This document shows, piece after piece, positions 1-64,000 of a stretch of DNA of 64,000 nt. A program made the translations under genes and the position numbers. Under the pieces are notes generated by a model. It was not told where the DNA came from, ran no database searches, and saw only the letters and a program-made list of their open reading frames with translations. The stretch is taken from assembly GCA_037379345.1 (NCBI GenBank), contig CM074515.1, positions 45,699,743 through 45,763,742 of the forward strand, given 5' to 3'. The stretch comes from Perna viridis (lineage: Eukaryota). Positions within the stretch are counted from its first letter, which is position 1. Each line of letters opens with the position of its first letter.

Positions 1-3000
1 ATGAATTTTCGCTATTTTAGTGTTGGACAAACAAGAGCGATAAATATAACATACAAAATGGATTTTTAAAGTGATGAAATTCTTATCATGTTTTTTCAGA
101 ATCATGATAAATTATACCCATGTTCAATTGATGGGATCTGCGAAAGTAAGTACCACAAAATTCAACAGGTCTACAGTATACTGTTTTACCCGTATCTTTC
201 TGTCTGCCTGTATCAAAGTTTTCACTATAGCAAAGTTTTCTTGAGGGGGGATATATAGAAATAAACCCTATCTGCCTGTCTTGGAAAACCACATGTAGAT
301 ATGCTTTGAAGGTCAGATGATTACTGTTGGAAGGCTTTGAATGAAATTAATTAAAGAGTTTTCCATTAAACATTTGACTCCCTTCAAAGATGGAGTATTC
401 TCTTTCTAAATTTGCTTTATATATATGATTAATTTAGCTGTACCATATCAGAAAATTTGATTTTTGGCTTGTTTGACAACAATGTTTACATATTAACCAT
501 ATGTTTTGGTATCACTAATCACACAGGTTTTCTTCATTTTTTTATTTCAATTAAAGTAGAAAATTCTATTTTTTTCTCTTTTTTGATTTTCTGAAATTAT
601 GGGAAATCTTTTTAATTAAATACTTTAATATTTTTTTTTATATATTTTAATATCTTTTGATAAATGATGATATCTATAATTATATAATTAAGAGTGTATT
701 TTATGATAGTAAATAACATTTTAAATTTTTAACATCCTTACTTATGACCTGATGATCTGTCTTTTATTAGGAACAAAAAATTCACTTCTTGGTATGTTGG
801 TTGTTTATTTTTGTTAAATTAATTTTATAAGACTTTATTTTTTTCTATTTCCTGGAAGATTTGATAAGTAACATGAAAATGTCAAGTAAATTTGATTAGT
901 TTAATTTAAAGCTGAAGGTTTTAGGGCTTTCAATGAATGTGCACTTCTGTTTAAGGACAGTCTATTTTCTTTTGTTTAAGGAGGTAGATTTAATGTAAGG
1001 GACACAACTCTTACAAATCATCAGAACGTTTGTATTCAGCATTTTACATCAATCTCATGTAAGCATCAAAGTAGCTTGGGTTGATTTCATTCTGTTTCAA
1101 ATGAAAGCTTGATAGGCTTTGGTGAAATTGAATATGATACAAACATCACTGATTTTTATACTTATGTCCCTTACCCAAGATCTACCTCCCTGAGGACAAT
1201 ATTTTTGTTTTGCTATGATCATCTTGGATAAATAAATTTGAGTAGAAATGTATCTGTGTACAAGGCCAAATGTGTCATATATGAAATTCATATAGTGCTT
1301 GATTCTTAAGATAATCATATGGTTATTATATAATGATTTACTTATAATAGTCATATGAATTTCATATGTTAATTTTGGTTTGGGAATATATGATAGTGAA
1401 AAACATGATTTTATGATAATCATGGGATAATCATATGTAAATTGAAACATGATTATCAAATCATGTTTGATTCTTATGATTATCACATGATTTAAACTTT
1501 ATGATACTCATGTTTGGCTTTTTTTGGCTTTGTTTATTATTGTTTTTTTTTTGTAGGATTTTTGTTGATTGTTTTGTCATGGATTAAAAAGGCAAACACA
1601 TCTCAATTGTCATAGTTGCTGGTCTTTCTTTGACTTAAAATTTTTCAAAAATGTGGAAATTATTTTAGAAACATAAAAAAATATACAGATATTCTAACTT
1701 ATTTTCTCTCAAATTTCAATTTTTTTATGGGCAAAAGAATGCCTTAGCTGTATTTATTCCTTCCTATTAGATAAAGAAAACTGTGAATGAATTTGTCAGA
1801 GATTTCCCCTGGGGAAACTTAACCATGGATTCAGATTTTTGTGATATAAGTATTATTATGTCATTAAAATTATAGGAAAGAAAGGCATGTTTTTAAAGCT
1901 AAAAATATGACTGTACCAATGTCAACATGAAATAGCTTTTTTGCACAAGTCTATTGATTAAAATGTAAAAACACAAAGTTAATCTGACTGATAAGATTGT
2001 GGGAGAATTCTGTCTTTGCCAACTAAGTAATGAAGCATTGTTTTGTTCTTTGGTTCATCTGTCTGTCCTTCCATCAAGAACACCATTTTGAGTTCTCTAG
2101 GATCAATAATAATCTATGAGTTACCAAACTTAGTGTGTAGTTAAGAATTTTTTGAAGGTCATATGTCATAGGTCAAGGTTACAGAACCAACTTTGTATAC
2201 AGCCAAAAAACATATTCTGCATTGGCCCTTTTTTGTTAGTGTTGTTTTTGGGCTGTAATGCTATCAACCACTGCAAAGATATATTTATTGTTTCTTAAAT
2301 TATTCTTCAAAATAGTATCAGGGCTTTGGGTAAGATATTACCTAGAAGAAAAGTGGTGGTAATATAGTTGAATACAAATAAAGTATTGCAGAAAATTCTC
2401 TTGTTAACTGTCATCTTCAGCAAACAATTTTTATATATTTTTATATAGTTTAATTGCATGGTACTTGATAAGAGTTATACTTCATAGAAGTTGATACTTA
2501 AGTCAGATAATTGCATGGTACTTGATAAGAGCTCTACTTCACCGAAGTTAATACTTAAGTAAGGTAATAGCAGATCCCTGCAGATAATACATCTGAACAA
2601 GGATGATACCAAAACTTAATTAAAAAACTATATCTGAAATTAAGTCATTGATTTTGAAGAATAAATGAAACTGAAGTTATTGTGAATGATCTATCTGCTG
2701 AAATGTCATCCTTTTAAATGTTTCATTGTGTGATTGATTGATAATCTTGTATGATAATTCCTCTTTTTTATGGAGTTGCATTCCTTTTTCATTGAGTAAA
2801 AGATGAAATATTAACTTCATTAGTAGAAATATTGTCTACATCTGTTTAAGAATGTTTTTTTTACTTTATATGGGTTTAATCAGCAGAAAAATATTTGATC
2901 TTTGTTAAGATTGGCTCTTGAAGTTATGTAATTTCTTCAACTTTAAAGAGATTAATTTCTCCTTTCATATCTTTGAGAGATAAGTTGAACTGTATTTTTT

Positions 3001-3219
3001 GCAAAAAATCATTGGAAAATAAAACCAAATGTCATGAAAACCTTGAAAAAGTGGTCCTTCCTTATTTGAATTTTTTACATGTTGAATTAATATTAAGAAT
3101 TTCAGAAAAATGTTTTTTGATGTAAGAAAGAGCAAAGAAGTACATTTTTTATTTGTACTATTGATGGAGAAAGCTAATAAATAAAAAATATGATATGATC
3201 AGATTTTCTTTTTCACCTA

Positions 3220-3979: not shown

Positions 3980-5290
3980 GAATAGGAGGGTATTTTGCAA
4001 GGCCACCTATTTTGAGTGGTAGTGAGTTGTAGGGTATTTTACAAGGCCACCAATTTTGAGTATCACAGAGTATTAAGGCATTTTCCTTAAGCACTAGTTC
4101 TGAATGTCACTGAATGGCAAAGTATTTTACCAGGACACCAATTCTGAATATTACTTAATAGAAGGGCACTCTCCCAAAGCACTATTTTAAATATTATTGA
4201 ATAGCAGAGCATTTTACTAGGGCACCAATTCTGAATATTACTTAATAGTAGGACACACTCCCAAAGCATGAATTTTGCATATTACTAAATAGCAGGGCAT
4301 TTTACAAGGGCATCAATTCGTAATATTACTGAATGGCAAAACATTTTGCCAGGACACCAATTCTGAATATAACTGAATGGCAGAGCATTTTACCAGAGTT
4401 CCAATTCTGAATATTACTGAATGACTGACCATTTTACAAGGGCACCAATTCGTAATATTACTGAATGGCAGAGCATTTTACCAGGGCTCCACTTCTGAAT
4501 ATTACTGAATGGCTGATCATTTTACCAGGGCTCCAATTCTGAATATTACTGAATGGCAGAGCATTTTATCAGAATTCCAATTCTGAATGTTACTGAATGG
4601 CAGAGCATTTTACAAGGGCACCAATTCATAATATTACTGAATGGCAGAGCATTTTACCAGGGCTTCAATTCTGAATGTCACCGAATGGCAGAGCATTTTA
4701 TCAGGGTCCCAATTCTGAATATTACTGAATGGCAGAGCATTTTACCAGGGTCCCAATTCTGAATATTACTGAATGGCAGAGCATTTTACAAGGGCACCAA
4801 TTTGTACTATTAATGAATGGCAGAACATTTTACCAGGGTCCCAATTTTGAATATTACTGAATGGCAGAACATTTTACAAGGGCACCAATTTGTAATATTA
4901 CTGAATGGCAGAACATTTTACCAGGGCTCCAGTTCATAATATTACTGAATGGCAGAGCATTTTACCAGGGTCCCAATTCTGAATATTACTGAGTGGCAGA
5001 GCATTTTACCAGGGCTTCAATTCTGAATATTACTGAATGGCAGAACATTTTACAAGGGCACCAATTTGTAATATTACTGTAAGGCAGAACATTTTACAAG
5101 GGCTCCATTTCATAATATTACTGAATGCAGAGCATTTTACCAGGGTCCCATTCTGAATATTACTGAGTGGCAGAGCATTTTACCAGGGCTTCAATTCTGA
5201 ATATTACTGAATGGCAGAGCATTTTACCAGGGCTTCAATTCTGAATGTTATACAATAACTGATTATTTTACCAGGGCACAAATTTGAGTG
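3980..5290. repeat. 44-bp minisatellite (aattctgaatattactgaatggcagagcattttaccagggtccc), roughly 29 units
   Basis: Periodicity visible directly (e.g. ctga at 4857 and 4901). Edges are degenerate. Confidence 0.95.
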
Positions 5291-6510
5291 TATTTTACAG
5301 TTGTTGATTTGCTATTATCAATTTTTTCTACAAAAATGGATTTGTTTTTCTACCATCAACATCTTATATTATAAAAATGATGCAATAAATTGTGTTTTTT
5401 TATGGTAACTTCCTGAATCTCAGGTGTGTTGTGGCTTTGTTTATTTAATAAGTTTTATTTTCTTATTATTTTAGAAAATATTGATTAGAAAGTAGAGATA
5501 TTAAATTTCCTTGCTGTGAAATTTTCAAGACTGTCTTTTTGTCGTATACCAAAGTTATATGATAACTGAATAAATGTTCAGAAATCCAATTGCAATTATT
5601 CAAATCACAGTTTACTATACCCCCACTAAACAACTTGGTGGTACATTGAAAATAACCTTGTCTATCCATCTGTCCAATTTTATTGTTGCAGTTATTGTGA
5701 CTCTAAATGGATAGATTTCAAATGTGGTATTGTAAACCATACTTTTCAGATACTGATATCTTTTTCACTGAGTTAATTGTAATTAGCAGGACACAAAACT
5801 TATTTAATTAATTTTAGATGAAAGTCTTGTGTTGATGTATTGAAAAAGTTTCTTTTTGTTGTTTTGTTTATTTTTGTTTATTTTTTTGGGGGGAGGTGGG
5901 TGGGTGGGTGGGTGGGATGGGGGTGACCTTCAGACTTACTTGTTTTGATGTTGTTAATTACAGAAAAAATAGAAAACTCATTTAAAGTCTATGTTTAATA
6001 CTTGTTTTAAATTACTTTATAAATAATGACTACACAGATTATATAAAGTAAAAAATGAAAATTTAAGTCATACTCCAAATAAAAAAAAACCTAATATCAG
6101 TTGATCCTTAATTAATTCTGAAACTAATGCCTTAAGTTAGGAAAACTATAGAGTTCTTCAAGGATGGTTACCCTTTTATTGCTGCATGCATACTTGTTGC
6201 GATGTAATCATCTCAGTTCTTATAAACAAGAAAAAATGATAAAAGTGTTGAGAGTACAAAAGTGTGAAATTTATTTTAAGGCACCCCTACAATTATAGAA
6301 AATATTCTTCAATTTTTTATTGCAGATTTCCATTTGAGTTAGTTCCACTTTATGCTTGTATTATCATGTTAAATTTCAGGATGTAACTGGTGAGAAACTT
6401 TGTAAATGTCAAACCAATCTGTCTTTGCTGTGGTGATACTATTCCTTGCTAAGACATGAACCAACTTAAAAAAATTAAATCTTGCAGTTTGAATCTTAAC
6501 TAGATAGATA

Positions 6511-33914: not shown

Positions 33915-34054
33915 CAAAAGAAGGTCAATGAAGCTAATATGAAGTCAGCAGCTTTACAGAGAGAGGCTGAAATGTTACGAAGTATGGTTGAAAAACAAAA
34001 AACTCAAATACATCAACTACAAGACTTGTTAGCAAACAGGGAACAACAACACAG
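33915..34054 (+). CDS. LRRCC1: LRRCC1-like exon: QKKVNEANMKSAALQREAEMLRSMVEKQKTQIHQLQDLLANREQQH(R)
   Basis: ttttacAG acceptor, AG|GTTCAT donor (phase 2). Overlaps ORF 33939-34235. Confidence 0.88.
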
Positions 34055-41900: not shown

Positions 41901-43048
41901 CATTTCTATGTCAACAATATAATCTAATATAATGAGACCATTGGGAATAGATTGAACTCGCTAAACCTGTTTTGTTGTTTTTTATCAAAATTAGATAAAT
42001 TGTTTAAGTCTCTATATTATTCAAAACACCACCGCTGCTTGACAGTTTATGCCAGTCAAATTGAAATATCTTTACTATTAGAATGATCAACCAATATGGG
42101 CAACAGATACTTTTTTATTGACCCATTTCTTTCAGGAAGTATTAGAAAAAGACTCTTATCACCCAAAAGTAAATTATTGCTTATTATTATAAATGGTAGT
42201 GTTGGGTATTGTTTTGATAAATCATCTGTTTTTTAATCAAAATTGTAAGAATTAATTGATTTAAAAAAAAAAAAAATTTGTGACTCAAAGCACTATCAAC
42301 ATTTCATGTAATATCACTATTCTTTTGGCAGTCAATTTATCATGATAATGCCCTCTATATAAAATAATTCCTTGTTGTACATTTATCTTTCCCATAATTT
42401 TTGTTACCTAAAACTTGAAATCCATTCATTGGAATGATTTGAAATTTGATATGAAGCTTCAACCAGATGTGGATATACCATCTGTGTCTTGATTACAATC
42501 CAATTTCCTGTTGACCAGAGTGACAGGTTGAAATCATTGATGTTGTAGGCTCATGGCAGATCTTGGGTTGTTGGGTATGAACAAAATGATTTATTTCGAG
42601 GATTAGGCACATAATAGCTTAGGGATTTTATTATTTATATTTAATTATTGTGAAAAATCAAGATTTCATGCAAACATTTTTTTCTCCAATTTTAGAAAGA
42701 AAGTATGCTATGTCTGCAACCTATAACTATGTAGTTGAAATCAGACATTTCTATCCTTCAGACACAATTTATTTAGTGTCAAATTATTCAAAGGGAAATT
42801 AGAAAGTATGATATTTTTTTAACACTATCCCAGACTAAAAGGAACCCATATTGAATTGTTATTTTTGTATGCAGATAAAATACTGTATTTTCAGAAATTC
42901 TTTGCATACAGATTATTCGATTTTAGGTTGTGCCTTTTGAAACAGAGCTAATGGTACTCAAATAAAATTTGACTTCATACTTCATACTGCTTACATCATT
43001 TCTGATATACGTCACTTCAGGCAGAAAGAGCCATTCATGTTTCAGAAT

Positions 43049-43811
43049 CATGAACTGGTGGATCGTTATGGTGTCCATCCATATGCTCCATGAACTCATG
43101 GATTGTTACGGTGTACCCACCTGAACCATGAACTGGTGGATCTTTATGGTGTGTCCATCTGCACCATGAACTAATGGATCGTTACAGTGTGTCCATCTGC
43201 ACCATGAAAACTGATTTGTTCATCATGAACTCGTGGATCGTTATGGTGTATCCATCTGCACCATGAAAACTGATTTATTCATCATGAACTCGTAAATCAT
43301 TACATTGTATCCATCTGCACCATGAAAAACTGATTTATTCATCATGAACTTGTGGATCATTACGGTGTGTCCATCTGCACCATGAAAACTGATTTATTCA
43401 TCATGAACTCGTAAATCATTATGGTGTATTCATCTGCGCCATGAAAAACTGATTTATTCATCATGAACTCTTTGATCATTATGGTGTGTCCATCTGCACC
43501 ATGAAAACTGATTTTTTCAACCGGTCATAGTTTTTCTTTCCTCTTTTGTCTACCCTGGACTTGACTTTTTATGTCCAACTCAGTGGGTATTCCTAAAAAC
43601 GCAGAGGACGCTTACCTTACCAGTGCACCTGGTCCATGCTCCCAGTTTTTAGTGGAGTCCGTGATGCTCATTTGCTTTTGTTACTTTGTATGTATGATTT
43701 TAGTTACTTCATGTTCTTTGTTGTGTATGTCTGTTTTCCATGTCTGGTTTTGTCCCTGGATTACATTCCTTTGATTACCGCTATAACCTTGGTTCCCTTG
43801 ATTACTCTTTC
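43049..43811 (+). mobile_element. Penelope-like 3' fragment with a tandemly amplified 5' end (~40-60-bp units)
   Basis: catgaactcgtggatcgttatggtgtatccatctgcaccatgaaaactgatttattcat repeated ~9 times, followed by the same tail as 20280-20568. Confidence 0.8.
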
Positions 43812-60991: not shown

Positions 60992-61091
60992 GACAAGACC
61001 AAACTGTTAGCTCAAGTGGAGGCCCAAGACTCAGTCATCAGTGGACTAAAAGCCGAGAGAAAACTATGGGGTCAAGAATTAGCACAGCAAG
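60992..61091 (+). CDS. LRRCC1: LRRCC1-like exon: DKTKLLAQVEAQDSVISGLKAERKLWGQELAQQ(G)
   Basis: ttacAG acceptor, G|GTAAAT donor. GLxxERKxWGxELAQQG is a strongly conserved LRRCC1 motif. Confidence 0.93.
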
Positions 61092-63524
61092 GTAAATATT
61101 GTAGAAACCTAGGAAATGAGTTACCTCCCTTTAATCTTGAGACCTATATTAGGTTAGCATACTTACTTTTGTTCCTGTTTTATTACTTGGAGTTCAAGTA
61201 TGGATTTTTTAATGAAAAAAATGGATCTTATTCAGTATTAATTGTTTTGATTATAGTCTCTAAGAAATTCCATTCTACCACAAGAACTAGCACAGTAAGG
61301 TAATACAGGAAACTAGTTACCTACCATTAAGAATGAAACCTATATAAAGTTAATATACTTTCTATATAATCTGTTTTTGCTTTTTTCATTTTGTAATATG
61401 GTTTCTTGAATGACAAAAATATCTCAATGCACTAATGGTGTTTAAGAAAAACAATGTTTTAATTAACAGTGGCGGATCCACCCCTCCTTTTTATTGGAAA
61501 TTTGTCATTTTCATGTGTAAAATAGACAAAAAATTGTAAATTATGTCCTAGCACCCCCCTTTTTCAGAGAAACCCCTGCTGGCATTCCTCATTTTGCAAA
61601 GTGTCTGGATCAGCCCCTGTTTAATGTCTCAACTTCAAACAAAATCTATTTCACATTACCTTCTGCAGTATGTTATAGTATGGCTTGTTATCTGTGTTAA
61701 TTACATAACATCAAGAAGGTCTCATAATGTAGGCACAGTATCTGTGTAATATGTAACTTCCAAGATTATAATGCTTCATACTTAGGTGGGATTTTACCTA
61801 CCACAGTATGATATCATAGTTATGATTTAATAGGAGTTTTGGGATTCTTACATTTTATGTCGTATTGTAGTGGCAGACTTAGTTCAGCAATTAGTAGCAT
61901 TTTTTTTTATCCTAATCCTTGCTGCAATATTTTAATGTTATTTATCTGCAATGCTTCCTGTTCTGTTAATAGGACAGATATTTAGAACTCTCTAGACCTT
62001 GCTTGCTTGGGCCTCCTATTTCATCGCCAATACTTCCTGTGCTGTTAAGAGGACTGGTATTTAGAACTCTCTAGACCGTGCTGGCAATGCTTTCTGTTCA
62101 GTTCATAAGACAGGTTCATTTATTCACAACTCTCTAGCCCGTGCTTAGCTTGGGCTTCCTTTAATATTGGTACTGCTTCCTGTTCTGTTAATAAAACAGA
62201 AATTTATGACTAGATAGACATCTTGACCAGCCACGTCACTACCAGCAAGGTTACTGATAAATTTCAATTAAAAATCTACTTAATAGTTATAGAAACACCT
62301 GATCACCCTAAACACTACCATCAATATTTATTTTTTTTATCAGAAGCAAGAGTTTTATGTATTGAAGGATTTTAGCTATCCTTGAGAGAGAAAAAATGTG
62401 TACGATTTTTTTATTCTGTGGTAAAAAAAGTGTGTTAATTTCTTTTTTTTATCTGTACTATAGATTTATAACATTTTCACTTCCTTATTGCTCTGTTTAG
62501 AATACCAGTATAAAAAGCCTTAAAGTTTTTCACTTCTGACTTGATTATATGTAATTTATCAATTCAATAGTTGAAAAAATATTAAATTCTATTTCTACAA
62601 TTTTCTTAAGATATGGTTTTAAATTATACTGTTATTGAGGAGAAAGTAAAATATATTAGTCATTGTATTTCTTAAAAAGGTGTCCAATCTCCTTCAATTA
62701 GACTTTTTAAAAACCTCAAAAAAAATTGTAATGTTCCCAATGAAATGCATTATGATAAAGGGAGATATAATCATTATTCATTATTATATTGTATATTTGC
62801 ACATTTTTCAAAATCATTGAAATCATTGTATTAATTTGCTCTACCTGAGAGGGTCCATGATTGGCCAATAAAACTCTCTTATATATCTTATATCTTATAC
62901 CCCGGTATATTCATGGAAATGATCAGCACACCAACAGTTGAGAATTGGACTTTTCTTTAGATCAACATGATATGTTGTACACTCCCATTGTGTAAAATTT
63001 GGTGACAAAATGATGTACTATTATTATACCCCAACTCAGCAAGTAGGTGATGTATTGGAGTCACCTTGTCCCTCCGTCCATCCGGCTGTCGTTCAGTCTA
63101 TCCAAATTTTATTGCAATTATCATGACTCCCAATGGATAGATTAATTTCAGATTTAATGTGTGGGTTCGTGCGTTTGGCGTATACATTGTTAGCGACTTT
63201 GGGTGTTGTCAGATATCAGCTTCCTATTTCTTGGAACTTTGCTATTTTAAATAATTGGAAAAATAAATAAAATTTTCATCACAAAAATCTCAGCTTCCAA
63301 TGGATGGATTGATTTCAAATTTTGTGTGTAACTTCATACAGCTTAAATTGAATGAAGTAACATTAATCTCACCAATTTGTAAAAAATAAGCAATCTTTCA
63401 TTTTCTAAGCATTCTAGTACCAATGATTACTTAAGTTTAGAGGACATCGATAAAATTGTATAACCAATCATGTTCCTGATATTGTAGCAAATAAATATGT
63501 TTAAAACTCAAGTTTATGTATATT

Positions 63525-63934
63525 TCATTTGTTTTTGTTACTTTGTGCGTGTGATTTTAGTTACTTTATGTTCTTTGTTGCGTATGTCTGTTTTCCATGT
63601 CTGGTCTTTGTCCCTGGATTACATTCTTTTGATTACCGCTATAACCTTGGTTTCCTTGATTACTCCTTGATTACCGCTATAACCTTGGTTCCCTTGATTA
63701 CTCTTTGATTACCTCTATAACCTTGGTTCCCGTGATTACTCTTTGATTACCTCTATAACCTTGGTTCCCTTGATTACTCTTTGATTACCTCTATAACCTT
63801 GGTTCCCTTGATTACTCCTTGATTACCGCTATAACCTTGGTTCCATTGATTACTCCTTGATTACCGCTATCACTTTGGTTCCCTTGATTACTCCTTGATT
63901 ACCTCTATAACCTCGGTTCCCGTGATTACTCTTT
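63525..63934 (+). mobile_element. Penelope-like 3' tail with its terminal 38-bp unit amplified 8 times, abutting an exon acceptor
   Basis: 63525-63670 matches 43668-43810. gattaccgctataaccttggttcccttgattactcttt recurs at 63631, 63669, 63707 ... 63897. Confidence 0.88.
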
Positions 63935-63937
63935 CAG

Positions 63938-64000
63938 GTGCATCATTAGCTCAGGATCGAGGGAGACTAGAAGCTAAAATTGAAGCTCAGAATTCTGAGA
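63938..64000 (+). CDS. LRRCC1: LRRCC1-like exon, truncated by the window end: (G)ASLAQDRGRLEAKIEAQNSE
   Basis: tttcAG acceptor at 63936-37, phase-1 start matches the previous exon, SLAQxRGxLEAxI motif. Confidence 0.9.

What the first reader, a model, noticed from the sequence alone, without database searches (positions are those of the whole stretch)
63510..63945. Retroelement tail inserted 3 nt before an LRRCC1 exon and now supplying the 3' splice signal
Seen: the repeat-family tail (same as 43668-43811) begins right after ...tttatgtatatttca (63527). Its eighth 38-bp terminal unit ends at 63934, immediately followed by CAG|exon. 'tttca' occurs at both junctions (63523-27 and 63932-36), like a TSD or microhomology. 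There is no AG dinucleotide between 63561 and 63935, and each unit is pyrimidine-rich with yTnAy-type motifs (ttgat, ataac-like). Inference: the pre-insertion acceptor was ...gtatatttcag. The insertion moved the native branch point and pyrimidine tract ~410 nt away and was tolerated because the tail is AG-free. Either the repeat array is exapted as an 8-fold redundant branch point and tract, or the intron uses a distant branch point with long scanning.
Basis: partly seen in the sequence, partly recalled or inferred. Interest (0 to 1): 0.8.

Follow-up and report, generated by a model that had tools for sequence, protein, structure and literature searches.

The report
Retroelement tail rebuilt an exon's acceptor
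A 410-base tail fragment of a very abundant mussel-type jumping gene landed exactly on the splice acceptor of an LRRCC1 exon, yet the exon is still spliced normally, so the element almost certainly now supplies the branch site and pyrimidine tract; this is a clean natural example of a known kind of event.

Summary
A 5'-truncated repeat copy (63525/8-63934) carrying eight 38-bp units ends flush with CAG|exon. TTTCA sits at both junctions, and no AG occurs from 63561 to 63935.

The repeat is the 3' UTR end of an RT-coding element with the diagnostic motifs of Naiad-type Penelope-like elements. Its copies are truncated at many different 5' positions. The gene is the LRRCC1 orthologue.

The intron position and phase are the same in three orthologous metagenome contigs that lack the element. 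The acceptor is therefore old and the insertion is derived.

An RNA contig joins 61091 to 63938, and stranded reads cover the exon about as deeply as its neighbours. DNA contigs from two other samples run from the last repeat unit into the exon, on the SNP allele that the RNA contig carries.

The AG at 63559-60 lies between the displaced native branch region and the exon. The branch point in use should therefore lie inside the element; candidates are TATAAC at -28 and TTGAT at -40. This is inferred, not mapped.

The AG-free state belongs to the unit itself (P about 0.08 by composition) and is shared by other copies, so it is not a mark of local selection. The "8-fold redundant branch point" is untested.

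Earlier notes of this scan had already classed this genome's repeats as Naiad elements.

The parts
60992..61091 (+). Upstream LRRCC1 coding exon (..KAERKLWGQELAQQ + first base of a Gly codon). The donor GT is at 61092-93.
   Evidence: Sequence. Piece 133-232 of the X11 RNA contig on L009. Collinear with oyster LRRCC1 P0011.
63504..63512 (+). Candidate native (pre-insertion) branch region AAACTCAAG, now about 425 nt from the acceptor.
   Evidence: Inference only. It aligns loosely with the TACTAAT branch-like motif upstream of the orthologous acceptor in L062.
63523..63527 (+). TTTCA, 5' copy of the putative target-site duplication. TCA is also shared with the family's internal CTCATTTG (microhomology).
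63528..63628 (+). Unique part of the 5'-truncated retroelement 3' UTR. It holds the only upstream AG (63559-60), a predicted cryptic acceptor.
   Evidence: Alignment to copy A and to many genomic copies. AG positions.
63629..63931 (+). Eight tandem 38-bp terminal units of the element, 70% pyrimidine and AG-free. The last unit (63895-63932) holds the branch-site candidates TTGAT (A at 63898, -40) and TATAAC (A at 63910, -28).
   Evidence: TRF, unit listing, motif scan.
63932..63936 (+). TTTCA, either the 3' copy of the duplication or the element's own terminus. Its CA is the CA of the acceptor CAG.
63936..63937 (+). Acceptor AG used in mRNA.
   Evidence: The X11 RNA contig joins L009 232 to 3079, which equals window 61091 to 63938 after the 2-nt 'ag' ambiguity.
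63938..64000 (+). LRRCC1 exon (G)ASLAQDRGRLEAKIEAQNSE.. It continues to 64026 beyond the window (L009 3081-3169), with donor GTGAGT.
   Evidence: Orthologous exons in L062, L063 and L064.
43040..43811 (+). Second, longer copy of the same family ('copy A'). It has an amplified ORF end, the unique 3' UTR and a single terminal unit.

Best explanation
A heavily 5'-truncated copy of a Naiad-type Penelope-like retroelement integrated by target-primed reverse transcription into the pre-existing acceptor ...GTATATTTCAG|GT of an ancient LRRCC1 intron. The copy keeps only the last ~100 nt of unique 3' UTR plus eight 38-bp terminal units.

The 5-bp duplication or microhomology TTTCA regenerated the CAG. 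The last bases before the exon are therefore unchanged, and the tract just upstream became more pyrimidine-rich.

The native branch site and tract were pushed about 410 nt away and are now separated from the exon by an AG at 63559-60. Productive splicing, which is observed, therefore most likely uses a branch point and pyrimidine tract inside the last 38-bp unit of the element, with TATAAC at -28 and/or TTGAT at -40 as candidates.

The insertion was tolerated because the tail happens to look like the 3' end of an intron: it is pyrimidine-rich, AG-free, and each unit carries branch-like motifs. The evidence points to passive tolerance, not to selection for the array.

Shown: the anatomy, the element's identity, the ancestral intron position, splicing at this acceptor, and presence of the junction in other individuals. 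Inferred: the exact empty site, which branch point is used, and fixation.
For: **Anatomy:**

**Element identity**
- The ORF ends about 290 nt before the ...GATTACTCTT(T) terminus.
- An 868-aa open frame shows a GIY..C..C..YVG N-terminus, CxC, DKA and YIDD. These match the Naiad diagnostics in PMC8557442.
- 5' ends are scattered from position 317 to 3110 of a 3187-nt reference copy.
- There are 59,653 first-look candidates in the genome.
- No Rfam hammerhead was found.

**TSD pattern:** TTCCATG in L004 and ATTCAC in L002. After ..ACTC, the 49 copies read T45, T43, T36, C27, A32.

**Gene:** the exon at 33915-34052 hits proteins whose cluster holds XP_034338248.2, LRRCC1 of Magallana gigas. The protein is collinear across the junction, ELAQQGSSLAQDRGRLE against ELAQQGASLAQDRGRLE.

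**Ancestral acceptor:** L062 has ...gctacag|GTGCC.., and L063 and L064 have ...ttag|GTGC.. after ..CAAG|gt. The phase is the same and no element is present.

**Splicing**
- A 2135-nt RNA contig (depth 16.7) joins the two exons directly.
- Stranded raw reads give about 9-10x on this exon, against about 7-16x on its neighbours.

**Other individuals**
- X3 and X4 DNA contigs run from 63907/8, inside the last unit, into the exon at single-copy depth.
- They carry G at 63942, as the X11 mRNA does. The assembly and the X21 reads carry A.

**Branch-point logic:** the AG-exclusion-zone rule of PMC1431707 places the branch point downstream of about 63545, which is inside the element.
Against: - No lariat or branch-point data exist; the candidate motifs rest on consensus matching only.
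- No empty allele or close-relative empty site was recovered. The three orthologous contigs are distant (about 80% amino-acid identity or less), so the exact pre-insertion junction is reconstructed, not observed.
- The joint table was swamped by repeat-derived joints. Junction read counts in the raw RNA run, and any use of the 63559-60 AG, could not be read.
- Phasing of transcripts to insertion-bearing alleles rests on one SNP.
- Homozygosity in X3 and X4 is inferred only from unbroken contigs at normal depth.
Confidence: 0.75

Rival explanations
1. The exon still uses its native branch point upstream of 63527. The spliceosome scans about 425 nt through the element to the AG at 63936-37, a distant-branch-point architecture.
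For: - The AG-free zone of 375 nt is of the size seen in verified distant-branch-point exons; PTB exon 11 has an AGEZ of 381 (PMC1431707).
- The tract is pyrimidine-rich throughout.
Against: - The AG at 63559-60 lies about 50 nt downstream of the native branch region and upstream of the AG-free zone. In the scanning model it would be chosen first.
- Good branch-like motifs stand at the normal distances, -28 and -40.
- Distant-branch-point exons are usually alternatively spliced, whereas this exon's read depth equals that of its neighbours.
Confidence: 0.07
2. Partial damage, not exclusive of the main explanation. The displaced native branch site pairs with the element's AG at 63559-60 as a cryptic acceptor in a share of transcripts. 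That adds 377 nt with stop codons, the products are removed by nonsense-mediated decay, and the insertion is a mild hypomorph rather than neutral.
For: - The sequence logic holds: a T-rich tract between about 63512 and 63558 is followed by TTTTAG.
- The extension is 377 nt, not a multiple of three, and the exon's reading frame is closed upstream of 63850.
- TEs within 20 bp of acceptors are typically mutagenic in mammals (PMC3088655).
Against: - No such isoform appears in the RNA contig.
- Exon depth is similar to that of its neighbours. NMD would hide these transcripts, so this is weak evidence.
Confidence: 0.25
3. The insertion is a rare or heterozygous allele, or an assembly artefact, and the spliced transcripts come from empty alleles.
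For: - No contig spanning the 5' junction in other samples was displayed.
- Bivalves are highly polymorphic for insertions (general knowledge).
Against: - The 3' junction (last unit plus exon) is present in DNA contigs of two other samples from two other studies. Those contigs have normal single-copy depth and do not break at the junction.
- Both SNP alleles at 63942 occur with the insertion, A in the assembly and G in X3 and X4. Both are seen in spliced RNA, A in X21 and G in X11.
Confidence: 0.05
4. The eight-unit array is selected as a redundant, copy-number-tunable branch-point and pyrimidine-tract module (true exaptation, a VNTR tuning exon inclusion).
For: Every unit carries TTGAT and TATAAC motifs and no AG.
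Against: - Arrays of 7-16 units with the same properties are common at unrelated loci.
- The AG-free state is expected from the unit's composition.
- Only the unit nearest the AG lies at a normal branch distance.
- There are no data on copy-number variation.
Confidence: 0.05

Closest known systems
Naiad clade of Penelope-like retroelements (Craig, Yushenova, Rodriguez & Arkhipova 2021, PMC8557442)
   Same: - The element has an N-terminal GIY-YIG-like endonuclease region, a CxC linker, a DKA motif, and a C-terminal RT ending the ORF.
- It shows extreme 5' truncation, tens of thousands of copies in a mollusc-type genome, and no hammerhead ribozyme.
- A terminal 38-bp unit falls in the size range of the described 30-40-bp 'tail'.
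   Different: - Here the terminal unit is amplified to 7-16 tandem copies in many insertions.
- The target or microhomology preference seen is TTYCA rather than the reported (TA)n.
- Pfam does not score the endonuclease part, and no RT phylogeny was made.
TE-derived 3' splice signals, e.g. antisense Alu exonization (Lev-Maor et al. 2003; Sorek et al. 2002; cited from general knowledge)
   Same: A retroelement's pyrimidine-rich stretch sits directly upstream of a used AG and serves as the polypyrimidine tract.
   Different: No new exon is created. An ancestral, apparently constitutive exon keeps its boundary while its upstream signals are replaced wholesale by the element.
Distant-branch-point exons with long AG exclusion zones (Gooding et al. 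2006, PMC1431707)
   Same: The AG-free zone of 375 nt upstream of the acceptor falls in the size range of verified cases.
   Different: The zone was created at one stroke by an AG-free tandem repeat. Branch-like motifs exist at normal distance, and the zone's 5' boundary AG cuts off the native branch site. No alternative splicing was seen.
Intronic TE 'underrepresentation zones' and mutagenic insertions near splice acceptors (Zhang, Romanish & Mager 2011, PMC3088655)
   Same: It is a sense-oriented retroelement insertion within 20 bp of an acceptor, the class that is most depleted and most often mutagenic in mammals.
   Different: This one is tolerated and apparently common or fixed, plausibly because its duplication restores the CAG and its tail mimics an intron's 3' end.

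Membership tests
Naiad Penelope-like element | N-terminal GIY-YIG endonuclease with two Cys between GIY and YIG (CCHH) | tested here: inconclusive
   The 868-aa frame in L061 starts ..IIYLCNLCGLKYVGET..H..H.., which fits by eye. Pfam GIY-YIG does not score it, and the frame is cut within the motif.
Naiad Penelope-like element | CxC motif between EN and RT | tested here: met
   ..KPPDCSCKTSPF.. is present in L053 and L061. The feature is listed as diagnostic in PMC8557442.
Naiad Penelope-like element | DKG motif modified to DKA | tested here: met
   ..VVVPADKAQNNIVF.. (criterion).
Naiad Penelope-like element | Reverse transcriptase core (YxDD) as the C-terminal domain | tested here: met
   ..FRYIDDVLSL.. 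is present and the ORF stops soon after the thumb. Pfam RVT_1 is only weak, E 0.0044 and below its cut-off.
Naiad Penelope-like element | Frequent 5' truncation and very high copy number | tested here: met
   5' ends lie at positions 317-3110 of a 3187-nt reference in 49 copies. First-look candidates number 59,653 for the ORF end and about 5,100-5,300 for the tail; these are candidates, not curated copies.
Naiad Penelope-like element | No canonical hammerhead ribozyme | tested here: met
   Rfam at gathering thresholds gave no hit on L061 or L009.
Naiad Penelope-like element | Insertion bias for (TA)n microsatellites | tested here: inconclusive
   Some flanks are TA-rich (the window copy, L053, L029). 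The clearest regularity is TTYCA at the 3' junction.
Naiad Penelope-like element | Placement in the Naiad clade by RT phylogeny | not tested
   No tree was built.
LRRCC1 orthologue | Collinear similarity to proteins named LRRCC1 | tested here: met
   The exon at 33915-34052 matches P0011 at 63% identity, residues 527-572. P0011's cluster holds XP_034338248.2, LRRCC1. The exons flanking the insertion read collinearly on P0011.
LRRCC1 orthologue | N-terminal leucine-rich repeats in the same gene | not tested
   The window holds only coiled-coil exons. The spliced, joined model was not built or searched.
Distant-branch-point (long AGEZ) exon | AG exclusion zone of 100 nt or more | tested here: met
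   375 nt.
Distant-branch-point (long AGEZ) exon | Branch site and tract at the 5' end of the zone, none near the acceptor | tested here: not met
   TATAAC at -28 and TTGAT at -40 lie in the last unit. This was tested by motif only.
Exapted TE splice signal | The branch point in use lies in TE sequence | not testable with these tools
   This needs lariat mapping. Here it is only inferred from the position of the AG at 63559-60.

The most novel reading that the evidence does not exclude
This Naiad family may be intrinsically 'acceptor-compatible'. Its integration favours TTYCA, which is the invertebrate acceptor core minus the G. The duplication then restores the CAG, and the tail brings its own pyrimidine tract and branch motifs. 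Insertions directly into 3' splice sites would therefore be self-healing, so the family can colonise or renew acceptors genome-wide, with the number of 38-bp units acting as a variable that tunes splicing efficiency.
Probability: 0.12. Interest if true: 0.65.

Novelty: new member of a known kind. Interest (0 to 1): 0.35.

Why it matters
Sense-oriented retroelement insertions within a few bases of a splice acceptor are the class most strongly purged, and most often disease-causing, in mammals. Here one sits on the acceptor itself in an essential-looking centrosomal gene, and the exon is still included.

The case gives a natural substrate for asking what minimal sequence an intron's 3' end needs, because the branch site and tract were replaced wholesale. 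It also shows how the 3' end of a Penelope-like element can pass for an intron end.

It also offers a concrete, testable locus for branch-point choice in a repeat array. It does not reveal a new mechanism.

Tried and rejected
- **Raw-read junction counts.** The single read-laying run returned a joint table filled with repeat-derived joints. The 61091->63938 count in the raw RNA run, any 61091->63561 joints, and any empty-allele joint (a skip of about 407 nt) in the DNA runs could not be read. The splice is documented only by the X11 contig and by exon depth.
- **Empty site via protein search.** The word search with the exon plus its in-frame intron tail gave one hit, which led to a distant orthologous locus (L062) and not to a close relative.
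- **Oyster locus.** The oyster LRRCC1 protein P0020 is not on record for a locus look-up.
- **Intron homology with L062.** A script-only local alignment of the joined insertion flanks against L062 shows TGTAT..CAG similarity, but it is too short and AT-rich to count as homology.
- **Pfam.** It gave nothing for the 751-aa ORF or for the N-terminal 150 aa. Classification rests on motifs named in PMC8557442.
- **GIY-YIG genome scan.** The hits were not linked to this family, apart from one 62%-identical relative.
- **Helitron/Helentron or MITE origin.** This was considered for the tandem-repeat-bearing element and dropped once the RT ORF was found directly upstream of the tail.
- **Steps deliberately left out.** No consensus of the element was built.
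Full report
**1. The observation**

The sequence reads ...gtatatttca / tttgtttttgttac ... gattactcttt / cag / GTGCATCA.
- Tandem Repeats Finder reports a 38-bp array at 63629-63931, with 8.0 copies and 93% matches.
- The stretch from 63525 onward aligns to the copy at 43668-43811, and both copies end ...GATTACTCTTT.
- A search of the window's own genome gives more than 5,000 first-look candidates. Matches run from 63525 to 63934.
- AG dinucleotides between 63500 and 63940 occur only at 63511, 63559 and 63936.
- TTTCA stands at both junctions.

**2. What the repeat is**

Longer copies carry, directly upstream of the tail, an open reading frame ending ...KFYGRHHELVD..TMKTDLFNGS*. This lies about 290 nt before the terminus.

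The longest frame seen is 868 aa, in L061. It shows:
- a GIY..C..C..YVG-type N-terminus;
- a CxC motif (PPDCSCK);
- a DKA motif (PADKAQN);
- an RT core with YIDD.

Pfam gives only a sub-threshold RVT_1 hit. These are the diagnostic features that Craig et al. list for Naiad Penelope-like elements. They also list heavy 5' truncation, tens of thousands of copies, lack of hammerheads, and a 30-40-bp tail (PMC8557442).

Here the family matches on each point tested:
- 5' ends of 49 copies are scattered between positions 317 and 3110 of a 3187-nt reference copy.
- The ORF end has 59,653 first-look candidates in the genome.
- Rfam finds nothing in L061 or L009.

Earlier notes of this scan had independently called this genome's abundant repeats Naiad elements. 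'Retroelement tail' is therefore right. The copy at the exon keeps only the last ~100 nt of unique 3' UTR plus eight terminal units.

**3. Junctions**

After ...GATTACTC, the 49 copies read T45, T43, T36, C27, A32. The commonest 3' junction is therefore TTTCA.
- Where both junctions of short copies can be read, the pentamer belongs to a duplication: TTCCATG in L004 and ATTCAC in L002.
- The window copy fits this pattern with TTTCA.
- Its TCA is also shared with the family's internal CTCATTTG, which is the kind of 5' microhomology expected of target-primed reverse transcription.
- Under the duplication reading, the nick lies between the A and the G of the acceptor AG, and the duplication restored the CAG.

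**4. The gene and the age of the acceptor**

The window holds a string of coiled-coil exons.
- One of them (33915-34052) was searched alone against protein representatives. It hit, among others, a 1017-aa protein.
- That protein's cluster contains XP_034338248.2, LRRCC1 of Magallana gigas.
- The oyster protein reads ...AERKLWGQELAQQGSSLAQDRGRLESKIE.... This is collinear with the two exons flanking the insertion (QQ | G | ASLAQDRGRLEAKIE).
- A word search with the exon, followed by a locus look-up, gave metagenome contig L062. There the orthologous exon (about 80% amino-acid identity) is preceded by ...tttactaattgtatgctacag|GTGCC and no element.
- A degenerate DNA pattern found two further contigs from distant invertebrates. 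In these..CAAG|gt, a 60-nt intron, and ag|GTGC.. show the same intron position and phase.

The acceptor position is therefore ancient and the insertion is derived. How recently it occurred could not be determined. Pairwise identity of 90-95% to other copies suggests it is not very young.

**5. Is the exon still spliced?**

Reads and contigs of four runs were laid on L009 (window = L009 + 60857).
- A 2135-nt contig of RNA run X11 (depth 16.7) has adjacent pieces on L009 133-232 and 3079-3169. With the 2-nt 'ag' ambiguity, this is the GT-AG intron 61092-63937.
- The same contig continues into the downstream exons.
- In the stranded raw-read run X21, the exon carries about 9-10 reads (10 at L009 3085). 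Its neighbours carry about 7-16. All lie on the strand expected for a + strand gene, so there is no gross skipping.
- DNA contigs of two other samples from two other studies (X3, X4) run from 63907/8, inside the last unit, through the exon. They have ordinary single-copy depth and do not break at the junction.
- Those contigs carry G at 63942, as the X11 mRNA does. The assembly and most X21 reads carry A.

Both SNP alleles are therefore linked to the insertion and both are seen spliced. The joint table was saturated by repeat-derived joints, so raw junction counts and possible empty-allele joints could not be read.

**6. How it most likely works**

The native branch region and tract now lie about 410-425 nt upstream. 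Between them and the exon stands the element's AG at 63559-60.

In the scanning model, the first AG more than about 12-15 nt downstream of the branch site is used, and the branch point is sought within the AG exclusion zone (PMC1431707). The productive acceptor at 63936-37 therefore implies a branch point downstream of about 63545, which is inside the element.
- The last unit offers TATAAC (A at 63910, -28) and TTGAT (A at 63898, -40).
- These are followed by a 72% pyrimidine stretch ending CTCTTTCAG.
- The same gene's other acceptors use similar TTGAT- and CTGAT-like motifs and weak A/T-rich tracts.

I put this reading at about 0.75. It is an inference, because no lariat data exist.

A non-exclusive caveat is that the old branch site and the AG at 63559-60 form a plausible cryptic acceptor. 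Its 377-nt extension carries stops, so such transcripts would be removed by NMD and remain invisible here.

**7. What is not supported**

The AG-free state is not evidence of local selection.
- A shuffled unit is AG-free in a third of trials, and the unit plus the unique part in about 8%.
- Five of seven arrays elsewhere are AG-free.
- The other long AG-free runs in the window are also tandem repeats.

Arrays of 7-16 units are common in this family, so the eight units need no special explanation. Nothing bears on 8-fold redundancy.

**8. Comparison and novelty**

The closest known phenomena are:
- TE sequences serving as pyrimidine tracts or acceptors (Alu exonization, from general knowledge);
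- long AG-exclusion-zone exons (PMC1431707);
- depletion and mutagenicity of TEs within 20 bp of acceptors (PMC3088655).

This case differs in that an ancestral, apparently constitutive exon keeps its boundary while everything upstream of the CAG is replaced by a Penelope-like tail. It is a new, unusually clean member of a known kind.

The most novel reading not excluded is that this family is intrinsically acceptor-compatible, through its TTYCA preference, its CAG-restoring duplication, and its built-in tract and branch motifs. I give that about 0.12.

**9. Housekeeping**
- Exons were searched singly by reference, and the joined spliced model was left out.
- The only joining done was of the two insertion flanks, inside a script, for one local alignment.
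- No consensus of the element was built.

Noticed in passing
L002-L008 (e.g. L004:1604-1984, L007:1604-2212): Many copies of this Naiad family end in 7-16 tandem 38-bp units instead of one. Single-unit copies already carry a ~12-nt direct repeat, GATTAC(AT)TCTTT, spaced 38-40 nt apart, which is a ready template-switch or slippage point for an RT related to telomerase.
   Followed up: partly
window 43045-43519: In copy A, the coding end of the element's ORF (..HELVDRYGVSICTMKTDLF) is itself amplified as 38/59/119-bp tandem repeats upstream of the 3' UTR.
   Followed up: no
L004:1440-1990; L002; window 63523-63936: The family's 3' junctions favour TTYCA (after ..ACTC, 49 copies read T45, T43, T36, C27, A32). 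Clear duplications are TTCCATG, ATTCAC and TTTCA. This preference differs from the (TA)n bias reported for Naiads and resembles an acceptor core.
   Followed up: partly
L062:300-790; L063:520-800(-); L064:1230-1510(-): Metagenome contigs carry orthologous LRRCC1 exons from other invertebrates with the same intron position and phase. L062 has a near-consensus TACTAAT branch motif about 15-20 nt before the acceptor.
   Followed up: partly
L001:2990-3200 (about 790-1000 nt beyond the window end): An antisense fragment of the same element family lies in the intron two exons downstream of the insertion.
   Followed up: no
window 63559-63560: TTTTAG inside the element is a predicted cryptic acceptor for the displaced native branch region. 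Its use would add 377 nt with stop codons.
   Followed up: no
L006 (minus strand), 3' junction: Another multi-unit copy ends ...ACTCTTTCAG|GGAGTG, so it also creates a CAG. Whether this abuts an exon was not checked.
   Followed up: no
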